A DNA stretch of 57,754 bases, the filler included, from Platydemus manokwari (lineage: Eukaryota): NCBI GenBank assembly GCA_037951405.1. It is 6 parts of 6 records of this genome, joined end to end, with 100 filler letters (N's around TTAATTAATTAA, not from the genome) between each part and the next. Parts side by side here need not be neighbours in the genome. Positions count along the whole stretch, not along the records: positions 26,893 to 36,989 come from JBBMOY011153215.1; 5 more parts are not named here. One strand, 5' to 3'. The translations under genes and the position numbers were made by a program. The notes under the pieces are model-generated. The model was not told where the DNA came from. It saw only the letters and a program-made list of their open reading frames with translations, and made no database searches. Below are positions 31,583 through 31,639 of this stretch, one piece after another (position 1 is the stretch's first letter; every line of letters starts with the position of its first letter).

Positions 31583-31639
31583 GATTGATTTCGTCCTAGA
31601 TGGGACTCATCAGTGCAGTCGCAAAACTGCAGATCAATC
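31583..31639 (-). ncRNA. Type III hammerhead ribozyme
   Basis: Minus-strand RNA: GAUUGAU-C^UGCAGU-UUUGCG-ACUGCA-CUGAUGA-GUCC-CAUCUA-GGAC-GAA-AUCAAUC. Stem III 7 bp, stem I 6 bp, stem II 4 bp, all Watson-Crick. Complete core CUGAUGA/GAAA/UH. Predicted cleavage after AUC, between 31632 and 31631. Confidence 0.95.

What the first reader, a model, noticed from the sequence alone, without database searches (positions are those of the whole stretch)
31583..31639. Intact solitary type III hammerhead ribozyme in an animal-type genome
Seen: the minus strand folds into a complete hammerhead. All core nucleotides are present (CUGAUGA, GAAA, AUC cleavage triplet), the three stems are perfectly paired, and stems I and II are closed by loops (type III topology). 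Loop 1 begins with U and loop 2 ends in A, the usual tertiary-contact residues of fast natural hammerheads. Known: metazoan genomic hammerheads are mostly type I, in tandem retrozymes or Penelope-like elements, whereas type III is typical of viroid-like RNAs and plant retrozymes. Here there is no tandem partner, no recognisable reverse-transcriptase ORF nearby, and I found no opposite-polarity copy, yet the motif is undamaged while neighbouring transposons are decayed. Inference: a recently mobile self-cleaving RNA element, or a domesticated ribozyme that processes a host transcript.
Basis: partly seen in the sequence, partly recalled or inferred. Interest (0 to 1): 0.9.

Follow-up and report, generated by a model that had tools for sequence, protein, structure and literature searches.

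The report
Solitary canonical type III hammerhead ribozyme
A complete, single-copy self-cleaving hammerhead RNA motif really is encoded on the minus strand of this AT-rich non-coding DNA. Isolated motifs of this type have already been reported in insect genomes, and neither its role nor the organism could be established here.

Summary
Window 31583-31639 (minus strand) encodes a full type III hammerhead ribozyme. All core nucleotides are present, helices III, I and II have 7, 6 and 4 perfect Watson-Crick pairs, and the predicted cut lies between 31632 and 31631. Rfam RF00008 gives 44.6 bits, E 2.7e-7, over the whole model, but this is below the gathering score of 48.5. A relaxed descriptor found nothing in 400 Mb of composition-matched random sequence, so it is not chance.

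It is solitary. There is no second ribozyme of either polarity, no tandem or LTR-like repeat, no ORF or Pfam domain, and no unusual RNA structure around it. In the only public run that holds the locus, contigs show single-copy depth with no diverged copy laid over the motif. Stem-fixed and loop-fixed pattern scans of viral, metagenome and prokaryote collections found nothing.

It fits none of the known carriers: plant LTR retrozymes, animal tandem retrozymes, Penelope-like elements, viroid-like RNAs, or the extended insect and deltavirus-like type III motifs.

By inference only, I favour a retained cis-cleaving ribozyme in a host non-coding transcript (about 0.4). A recent lone insertion without host function is almost as likely (about 0.33). 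Conservation, expression, gene context and the organism's identity were not testable. Interest is moderate.

The parts
31583..31639 (-). Complete type III hammerhead ribozyme (57 nt)
   Evidence: Rfam RF00008 matches the full model at 44.6 bits, E 2.7e-7. It is the only descriptor hit in the piece. The centroid fold is the hammerhead fold.
31633..31639 (-). Helix III, 5' strand GAUUGAU (U16.1 at 31633)
   Evidence: Pairs with AUCAAUC at 31583-31589 in 7 Watson-Crick pairs.
31632..31632 (-). C17, the cleavage-site nucleotide. The predicted scission is 3' of it, between 31632 and 31631, within triplet AUC.
   Evidence: Position follows from the Rfam alignment. The RUH consensus is taken from PMC7936874.
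31614..31631 (-). Helix I hairpin: UGCAGU / ACUGCA (6 bp) capped by loop 1 UUUGCG (31620-31625)
   Evidence: Pairing probability is 0.95-0.96 in every sequence context tested.
31607..31613 (-). Conserved core CUGAUGA (C3 to A9)
31593..31606 (-). Helix II hairpin: GUCC / GGAC (4 bp, including the G10.1-C11.1 pair) capped by loop 2 CAUCUA (31597-31602)
   Evidence: Pairing probability is 0.72-0.93.
31589..31592 (-). Conserved core GAAA (G12, A13, A14, A15.1)
31583..31588 (-). Helix III, 3' strand UCAAUC
31576..31590 (-). Palindrome AAUCAAUCAUUGAUU, overlapping the 3' strand of helix III. It could form a hairpin that competes with helix III.
   Evidence: Read directly from the sequence. Predicted probability of this hairpin is only 0.07-0.10. 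Helix III probability falls from 0.57 to 0.10-0.37 once flanks are added.

Best explanation
Shown: the locus encodes a genuine canonical type III hammerhead ribozyme. It is present once, in non-coding, very AT-rich DNA, outside any recognisable retrozyme, Penelope-like element, satellite or viroid-like unit.

From established hammerhead chemistry: any transcript of the minus strand that folds the motif will cut itself 3' of C17, between 31632 and 31631. This leaves an upstream fragment ending in a 2',3'-cyclic phosphate and a downstream fragment starting with 5'-OH UGCAGU. With a 7-bp helix III it should act as a monomer.

Inferred, and my preferred reading: the motif is retained by selection as a cis-acting processing or destabilising element in a host non-coding transcript, intron or UTR. 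It would be analogous to the isolated hammerheads of termites and flies and to the intronic and 3'-UTR hammerheads of amniotes and rodents. It would not be a neutrally decaying leftover.
For: - The motif is real and complete and is not a chance match (0 hits in 400 Mb of matched random sequence).
- Rescaling the E-value to RF00008 alone over a 500 Mb genome gives about 3e-6 (my arithmetic).
- Single copy: one Logan contig spans 29500-31840 at depth 10.4. The bin holding the ribozyme is at 13.1, and no variant letters are listed over the motif at an 80% likeness threshold.
- All 17 helix pairs are Watson-Crick and every core position is intact, while the surroundings have no coding capacity and sit at the genome's AT extreme. 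The motif is a sharp GC island: 45.6% GC against 23% and 17% in the 300 nt on either side.
- A copy from an old, diverged repeat family would very rarely stay undamaged. A young family should show other copies, and none is seen.
- The geometry matches fast natural type III hammerheads as described in PMC7936874: 6-bp helix I with a 6-nt loop, 4-bp helix II, RUH triplet and a GAAAY box.
- Published precedent exists for isolated type III hammerheads in insect genomes with no ORFs nearby (PMC7936874), and for co-opted hammerheads in introns and UTRs (PMC6155905).
Against: - No orthologous sequence could be obtained, so conservation and covariation are untested.
- No RNA run holds the locus, so transcription of the minus strand is unknown.
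- No gene, exon or promoter could be placed.
- The Rfam score is below the gathering threshold.
- Loop 2 has 6 nt, not the typical 4, and loop-loop contacts cannot be evaluated from sequence.
- With flanks included, helix III competes with other AT-rich pairings; its predicted probability is 0.1-0.4.
- Most eukaryotic genomic hammerheads described so far belong to mobile elements (PMC7229834, PMC7761336), so the prior favours a mobile origin.
- The single-copy evidence comes from contigs of one run, which show presence better than absence.
Confidence: 0.4

Rival explanations
1. A lone, recent DNA copy of a ribozyme-bearing RNA, with no present host function. The source could be a retrozyme-like retroelement, or an infectious viroid-like or deltavirus-like circular RNA. 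It is intact only because it is young.
For: - Most eukaryotic genomic hammerheads reside in retroelements (PMC7229834, PMC7761336).
- Plant type III hammerheads often occur as monomers (PMC7761336).
- Hammerheads related to those of deltavirus-like agents occur as isolated motifs in termite genomes (PMC7936874).
- Short multi-copy repeats and a MITE-like inverted repeat lie within 1-2 kb.
- The hexamer AUUGAU flanks the unit on both sides.
Against: - There is no second copy at 80% likeness or more in the only genome run.
- There is no LTR, PBS/PPT-like context, tandem unit or partner ribozyme.
- The flanks have host-like 17-23% GC right up to the motif and no excess structure. Nothing but the 57 nt looks foreign.
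- No related motif turned up in the viral or metagenome scans.
Confidence: 0.33
2. One unit of a still-active low-copy element. Its partner ribozyme or other copies would lie outside the 10-kb piece, or be too diverged to be recognised.
For: The piece is only 10 kb. The reads tool sees only copies at least 80% alike. Hammerhead families can covary in their stems beyond that limit.
Against: - No second hammerhead of any type at E up to 1 in the 10 kb, or at E up to 10 within about 2 kb on either side.
- Known retrozyme spacings are 150-1000 nt (PMC7229834, PMC7761336).
- Depth is at single-copy level.
Confidence: 0.12
3. A chance or de novo look-alike that is never transcribed, or does not cleave.
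For: The score is below Rfam's gathering threshold. Helix III is only moderately stable in context. No expression data exist.
Against: 0 hits in 400 Mb of matched random sequence even with a relaxed descriptor. E is 2.7e-7. All core positions and 17 of 17 helix pairs are canonical.
Confidence: 0.07
4. Foreign DNA in the assembly, for example a bacterial or phage hammerhead or a laboratory construct.
For: Type III hammerheads occur in bacteria and phages (PMC6155905). Helix II GUCC/GGAC is the commonest one, and is also used in engineered ribozymes (my own knowledge).
Against: - The motif is embedded without a break in a 2.3-kb single-copy contig of the same AT-rich composition.
- No prokaryotic ORFs are present.
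- No match in 185,579 prokaryote genomes or in IMG/VR with stem-fixed or loop-fixed patterns.
- The sequence occurs in no held paper.
Confidence: 0.03

Closest known systems
Isolated type III hammerheads in termite genomes (Coptotermes, Cryptotermes) and dipteran genomes (Drosophila pseudoobscura, Musca, Rhagoletis, Hermetia), related to those of toad and termite deltavirus-like RNAs (PMC7936874)
   Same: Type III topology, encoded in DNA as isolated motifs, with no ORF or virus-like sequence in the flanks and no tandem partner.
   Different: The published motifs are 'extended': a 5-bp first stem of helix I, an internal loop plus an extra hairpin of about 20 nt, a 6-bp helix II, and a GCCR/YGGC loop-loop pseudoknot. 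This motif has a plain 6-bp helix I with a 6-nt loop and a 4-bp helix II with a 6-nt loop, and at most 2 complementary bases between the loops. Whether the host here is an insect is unknown.
Canonical type III hammerheads of plant viroid-like satellite RNAs, Avsunviroidae and plant LTR retrozymes (Rfam RF00008; PMC6155905, PMC4918200)
   Same: Same core. Same helix I geometry (6 bp with a 6-8 nt loop), 4-bp helix II GUCC/GGAC, RUH triplet and GAAAY box. Helix III is stable enough for monomeric cleavage.
   Different: There are no LTRs of about 350 bp, no second ribozyme 600-1000 nt away, no GC-rich (>55%) structured body, and no opposite-polarity ribozyme. Loop 2 has 6 nt rather than 4. The flanks have 17-23% GC.
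Co-opted hammerheads in vertebrate genes: intronic HH9/HH10-type motifs of amniotes and the discontinuous 3'-UTR hammerhead of rodent Clec2 genes (PMC6155905)
   Same: Single, non-repeated genomic hammerheads thought to act in cis on a host transcript.
   Different: The amniote motifs are type I. The Clec2 motif is a discontinuous type III with a helix I of 150-1500 nt. Both are defined by cross-species conservation inside known genes, which could not be shown here.
Metazoan non-LTR retrozymes and Penelope-like element hammerheads (PMC7229834; bioRxiv 10.64898/2026.07.22.740005)
   Same: Hammerheads in low-GC animal DNA.
   Different: Those are type I, often with a weak helix III, in tandem repeats of 150-450 bp or in pseudo-LTRs next to an RT/GIY-YIG ORF. 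None of these features is present here.

Membership tests
Hammerhead ribozyme, type III (Rfam RF00008) | Conserved catalytic core: C3-U-G-A-N-G-A9, G12-A-A14, the A15.1-U16.1 pair, and H17 (not G) | tested here: met
   CUGAUGA, GAAA, the A-U pair closing helix III, and C17 are all present.
Hammerhead ribozyme, type III (Rfam RF00008) | Three helices around the core, with helices I and II closed by loops and helix III open | tested here: met
   Helices of 7, 6 and 4 Watson-Crick pairs, with loops of 6 and 6 nt.
Hammerhead ribozyme, type III (Rfam RF00008) | Score at or above the family's curated gathering threshold (48.5 bits) | tested here: not met
   44.6 bits, and nothing is reported at gathering. 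The E-value of 2.7e-7 and the random-sequence control still make it a significant match. The shortfall appears to come from loop-length differences against the model.
Hammerhead ribozyme, type III (Rfam RF00008) | Loop 1 - loop 2 tertiary contacts that give fast cleavage at low Mg2+ | tested here: inconclusive
   Helix lengths (6 against 4 bp), U at the start of loop 1 and A at the end of loop 2 are compatible with such contacts. No pseudoknot is possible and no 3D test is available.
Hammerhead ribozyme, type III (Rfam RF00008) | Site-specific self-cleavage | not testable with these tools
   Needs in vitro transcription, or mapping of RNA ends.
Plant-type LTR retrozyme | Two LTRs of about 350 bp, each with a type III hammerhead, 600-1000 nt apart, with PBS and PPT and a GC-rich structured body | tested here: not met
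   There is one hammerhead only and no direct repeat longer than 40 nt. Flanks have 17-23% GC. The fold z-score is -0.8 over 701 nt.
Metazoan non-LTR retrozyme / satellite hammerhead | Tandem repeats of 150-450 bp, each with a type I hammerhead | tested here: not met
   No tandem array lies at or near the motif. The topology is type III. Depth is single-copy.
Penelope-like element / Terminon hammerhead | Minimal type I hammerhead in a pseudo-LTR beside an RT (with or without GIY-YIG) ORF | tested here: not met
   No ORF with any Pfam domain above threshold is found in the 10 kb. The motif is a full type III.
Extended type III hammerhead of deltavirus-like agents and insect genomes | Long helix I with an internal loop and an extra hairpin, a 6-bp helix II, and a GCCR/YGGC pseudoknot | tested here: not met
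   Read directly from the sequence: helix I is 6 bp plus a 6-nt loop, helix II is 4 bp, and loops UUUGCG and CAUCUA share at most 2 complementary bases.
Viroid-like circular RNA (endogenised copy) | Ribozymes in both polarities and a compact rod-like or branched fold of the unit | tested here: not met
   No ribozyme is found on the plus strand at E up to 10. Fold z-scores are -0.13 over 257 nt and -0.83 over 701 nt.

The most novel reading that the evidence does not exclude
A canonical hammerhead of the plant or viroid kind has become a single-copy, selectively maintained RNA-processing element in an animal genome. Alternatively, it is the last surviving piece of an endogenised viroid-like circular RNA in an animal. 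Either would be the first link between canonical type III ribozymes and animal hosts outside the extended deltavirus-like class.
Probability: 0.15. Interest if true: 0.75.

Novelty: new member of a known kind. Interest (0 to 1): 0.42.

Why it matters
Genomic hammerheads in animals are almost all type I and tied to retroelements. The few isolated type III motifs published so far, in termites and flies, have an unusual extended architecture and no known role.

A canonical, probably fast-cleaving type III motif kept as a single copy in non-coding DNA would add a case where the ribozyme cannot be explained by element processing. That makes it a clean test bed for asking what a lone self-cleaving RNA does for a host transcript: 3'-end formation, transcript destabilisation, or creation of 5'-OH ends.

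It also shows that Rfam's gathering cut-off hides such motifs from routine annotation. If relatives lack it, the finding is simply a recent stray insertion and of minor interest.

Tried and rejected
- **Partner or decayed hammerhead, or any other ribozyme.** Rfam scans at E up to 1 over the whole piece and E up to 10 over 29500-33700 found only this one hit.
- **Tandem, LTR-like or target-site repeats.** Nothing beyond short AT-rich chance matches.
- **Coding context.**
  - No stop-free segment has a credible Pfam hit.
  - A weak B-box-like hit at 27835-28014 (-) (E 0.013) was followed up against 1.8 billion representative proteins. The only match is a translated tandem repeat, P0001, so I rejected it.
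  - Ten ORFs are absent from the 15-billion protein collection.
  - An Atlas search of the repeat-derived segment gave no usable hit.
- **Relatives elsewhere.** Stem-fixed and loop-fixed patterns gave 0 hits in viral, metagenome and prokaryote-genome collections. A looser core pattern gave one viral contig, L001, which Rfam does not recognise as a hammerhead.
- **Literature and supplements.** The sequence is not in any held paper, nor in the held supplement text of Perreault et al. 2011.
- **Viroid-like compact structure.** Not present.
- **tRNA genes.** None, giving no sign of organelle DNA.
- **Bacterial-type promoter and terminator scan.** At chance level, as expected.
- **Papers not held.** De la Pena & Garcia-Robles 2010 (RNA), Hammann 2012 and Seehafer 2011. 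One literature query was too broad to be useful.
- **Organism identity.** Could not be determined.

Full report
**1. Observation**

Read on the minus strand, window 31639 to 31583 is GAUUGAUC-UGCAGU-UUUGCG-ACUGCA-CUGAUGA-GUCC-CAUCUA-GGAC-GAAA-UCAAUC. In standard hammerhead terms:
- Helix III is GAUUGAU/AUCAAUC, 7 Watson-Crick pairs including A15.1-U16.1.
- C17 is at 31632.
- Helix I is UGCAGU/ACUGCA (6 bp), capped by loop 1 UUUGCG.
- The core is CUGAUGA.
- Helix II is GUCC/GGAC (4 bp, with G10.1-C11.1), capped by loop 2 CAUCUA.
- The second core element is GAAA.

Helices I and II are closed and helix III is open, so the topology is type III.

Rfam's Hammerhead_3 model (RF00008) aligns end to end (1-54 of 54) at exactly these coordinates with 44.6 bits, E 2.7e-7. 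The 57-mer's centroid structure is the hammerhead fold. The minimum-free-energy structure differs only by a four-pair alternative between the core and the helix III 3' strand.

**2. Is it more than chance?**

The Rfam E-value already counts both strands of 10 kb and all 4227 families. Rescaled to this one family over a 500 Mb genome, it is about 3e-6 (my arithmetic).

A descriptor of my own specifies core, H17, the A-U closing pair and three helices. It finds this site and nothing else in the piece. It finds no site at all in 400 Mb of first-order Markov sequence with the piece's composition, even with helices relaxed to 4/3/4 pairs and G-U allowed.

The motif is also a sharp compositional island: 45.6% GC, against 23% and 17% in the 300 nt on either side. 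Only 1.1% of 57-nt windows in the piece reach that value.

One caveat: 44.6 bits is under the curated gathering score of 48.5, so a standard Rfam annotation reports nothing here. The shortfall appears to come from loop lengths, namely an insertion in loop 1 and a two-base deletion in loop 2 relative to the model (alignment). The core and stems are not the cause.

**3. Surroundings**

The 10-kb piece is 27% GC overall and 22-25% around the motif.

*Other RNA features.* No other Rfam family matches at E up to 1 in the piece, or at E up to 10 within about 2 kb on either side, on either strand. So there is no partner hammerhead, no opposite-polarity ribozyme, and no twister, HDV or hairpin motif. 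There are no tRNA genes.

*Repeats.* There is no tandem array at the motif and no direct repeat longer than 40 nt anywhere.

*Coding capacity.*
- Stop-free segments are short and have no credible Pfam match.
- The one weak hit, a B-box-like match with E 0.013 at 27835-28014 (-), found only a translated tandem repeat among 1.8 billion representative proteins. I dismissed it.
- Ten ORFs are absent from the 15-billion protein collection.

*RNA structure.* The RNA around the motif is no more structured than shuffled sequence: z is -0.13 over 257 nt and -0.83 over 701 nt.

Therefore none of the usual carriers is recognisable. There are no plant LTR retrozyme features (LTRs, PBS/PPT, second ribozyme, GC-rich body). 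There is no metazoan tandem retrozyme or satellite, no Penelope-like element with an RT ORF, and no viroid-like unit.

**4. Copy number**

Only one public run holds the locus, and it is kept as contigs with its organism coded. When laid at 80% likeness, a single contig spans 29500-31840 at depth 10.4, which is the single-copy level of the neighbouring unique stretches. The bin with the ribozyme sums to 13.1. No alternative letters or indels are listed inside 31583-31639.

By contrast, 32450-32850 and 33250-33385 reach summed depths of 40-93 with many loose ends, so they are short dispersed repeats.

So there is no evidence for a second copy at least 80% alike in that genome. The caveats are that contigs show presence better than absence, and that more diverged family members would be missed.

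**5. Relatives elsewhere**

I scanned with two patterns. One fixed the core and both stems and left the loops free. The other fixed the core and both loops and left the stems free. Neither gave a match in IMG/VR, the JGI metagenomes or 185,579 prokaryote genomes.

A looser core-plus-helix-II pattern gave one viral contig that Rfam does not recognise as a hammerhead. The sequence is in no held paper or checked supplement.

These collections hold few animal genomes, so the blanks exclude a bacterial or phage source better than they exclude eukaryotic relatives. No tool here could fetch orthologous eukaryotic loci, so conservation and covariation remain untested.

**6. How it should work**

From established hammerhead chemistry (PMC6155905), a folded minus-strand transcript undergoes in-line attack of the 2'-OH of C17 on its 3' phosphate. 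The products are an upstream fragment ending in a 2',3'-cyclic phosphate and a downstream fragment beginning with 5'-OH U(31631)GCAGU.

Type III motifs with a stable helix III cleave as monomers (PMC6155905). Several features match the description of fast natural type III hammerheads in PMC7936874: a 6-bp helix I with a 6-nt loop, a 4-bp helix II, the RUH triplet (AUC) and the GAAAY box (GAAAU). The exception is that loop 2 has 6 rather than the typical 4 nucleotides. The two loops share at most two complementary bases, so any contact would be non-canonical rather than a pseudoknot. This cannot be judged from sequence.

In thermodynamic predictions, helices I and II are robust in every context tested (probabilities 0.95-0.96 and 0.72-0.93). 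Helix III falls from 0.57 in the isolated 57-mer to 0.10-0.37 when AT-rich flanks are added.

The hexamer AUUGAU directly 3' of the motif repeats the 5' strand of helix III and forms a palindrome with the 3' strand. The predicted occupancy of that alternative hairpin is low (0.07-0.10). Nearest-neighbour models ignore the tertiary stabilisation of the hammerhead core, so this is a caveat, not a refutation.

No meaningful ORF follows the cleavage site; the longest within 250 nt is 20 codons. A ribozyme-driven translation role like that described for RNA viruses (PMC13725137) is therefore unlikely.

**7. What it most likely is**

The argument is indirect.
- A copy from an old repeat family, more than 20% diverged and hence invisible, would almost never keep 17 of 17 pairs and every core position.
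- A copy from a young family should have detectable siblings, and none is seen.
- A recent cDNA of an exogenous circular RNA should bring foreign flanks, but host-like 17-23% GC sequence without excess structure abuts the motif on both sides.

What remains is either selection on the 57 nt themselves, or a very recent and very short insertion.

I therefore favour, at about 0.4, a retained cis-cleaving ribozyme within a host non-coding transcript, intron or UTR. A young lone insertion without host function follows at about 0.33. A unit of a low-copy element with unseen partners is at about 0.12. A non-functional look-alike is at about 0.07, and foreign DNA at about 0.03.

Only 'genuine, complete, solitary type III hammerhead motif' is shown. 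Activity, transcription and selection are all inferred.

**8. Comparison with what is known**

Animal genomic hammerheads are mostly type I, in tandem retrozymes or Penelope-like elements, while type III is typical of plants and viroid-like RNAs (PMC7229834, PMC7761336, bioRxiv 10.64898/2026.07.22.740005).

It omits one precedent. Isolated type III hammerheads with no recognisable ORFs in the 2 kb of flanking sequence examined on each side have been described in two termite genomes. Similar motifs were found in several dipterans, and all are related to the ribozymes of toad and termite deltavirus-like RNAs (PMC7936874). [quoted passage not shown]

Those published motifs are an extended variant with a long helix I (internal loop plus extra hairpin), a 6-bp helix II and a conserved pseudoknot. 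The present motif does not meet those features and instead has the canonical architecture of satellite RNAs and plant retrozymes.

It is thus a new member of a known kind, namely solitary genomic type III hammerheads. Its architecture is unusual if the host is indeed an animal. That premise could not be checked: the piece carries no coding, rRNA or tRNA sequence, and the run's organism is coded.

**9. Verdict**

'Recently mobile' has no support. 'Domesticated' is plausible but untested. The rarity is overstated.
- Interest is moderate (0.42). The motif is clean and the locus would be a good test case for the function of lone ribozymes, but everything that would make it remarkable remains to be shown: conservation, expression, activity and an animal host.

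Noticed in passing
window 32450-32850 and 33250-33385: Short dispersed repeats. Summed contig depth is 40-93 against 10.4 for unique sequence, with many contigs breaking at 32593, 32774, 32823, 33292 and 33343, and one inverted joint at 32731/32813. No Pfam or Atlas match for their translations.
   Followed up: partly
window 30735-30756 and 31402-31423: A 22-nt inverted repeat, 95% complementary, with 645 nt between the arms. It looks MITE-like and ends about 160 nt from the ribozyme. A second contig with small indels is laid at 31374-31392.
   Followed up: no
window 31576-31590 and 31633-31638 (minus strand): The hexamer AUUGAU occurs as the 5' strand of helix III (31638-31633) and again directly after the ribozyme (31582-31577). 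With the 3' strand of helix III the second copy forms the palindrome AAUCAAUCAUUGAUU. It could be a competing hairpin, a duplication scar or chance. Predicted occupancy of the alternative hairpin is 0.07-0.10.
   Followed up: partly
window 31583-31639: At Rfam's gathering threshold nothing is reported in the piece. Routine annotation pipelines would miss this ribozyme, although its E-value is 2.7e-7.
   Followed up: yes
window 27835-28014 (-): A Cys/His-rich stop-free segment gave a weak hit to the ANCHR-like B-box Pfam family (E 0.013). Its only match among 1.8 billion representatives is a translated tandem repeat, so this is probably not an exon.
   Followed up: yes
window 32015-32074: A degenerate 16-nt tandem repeat (consensus TAAATAGATTGTACTT, 3.9 copies, 70% matches) lies about 400 nt upstream of the ribozyme on the minus strand.
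   Followed up: no
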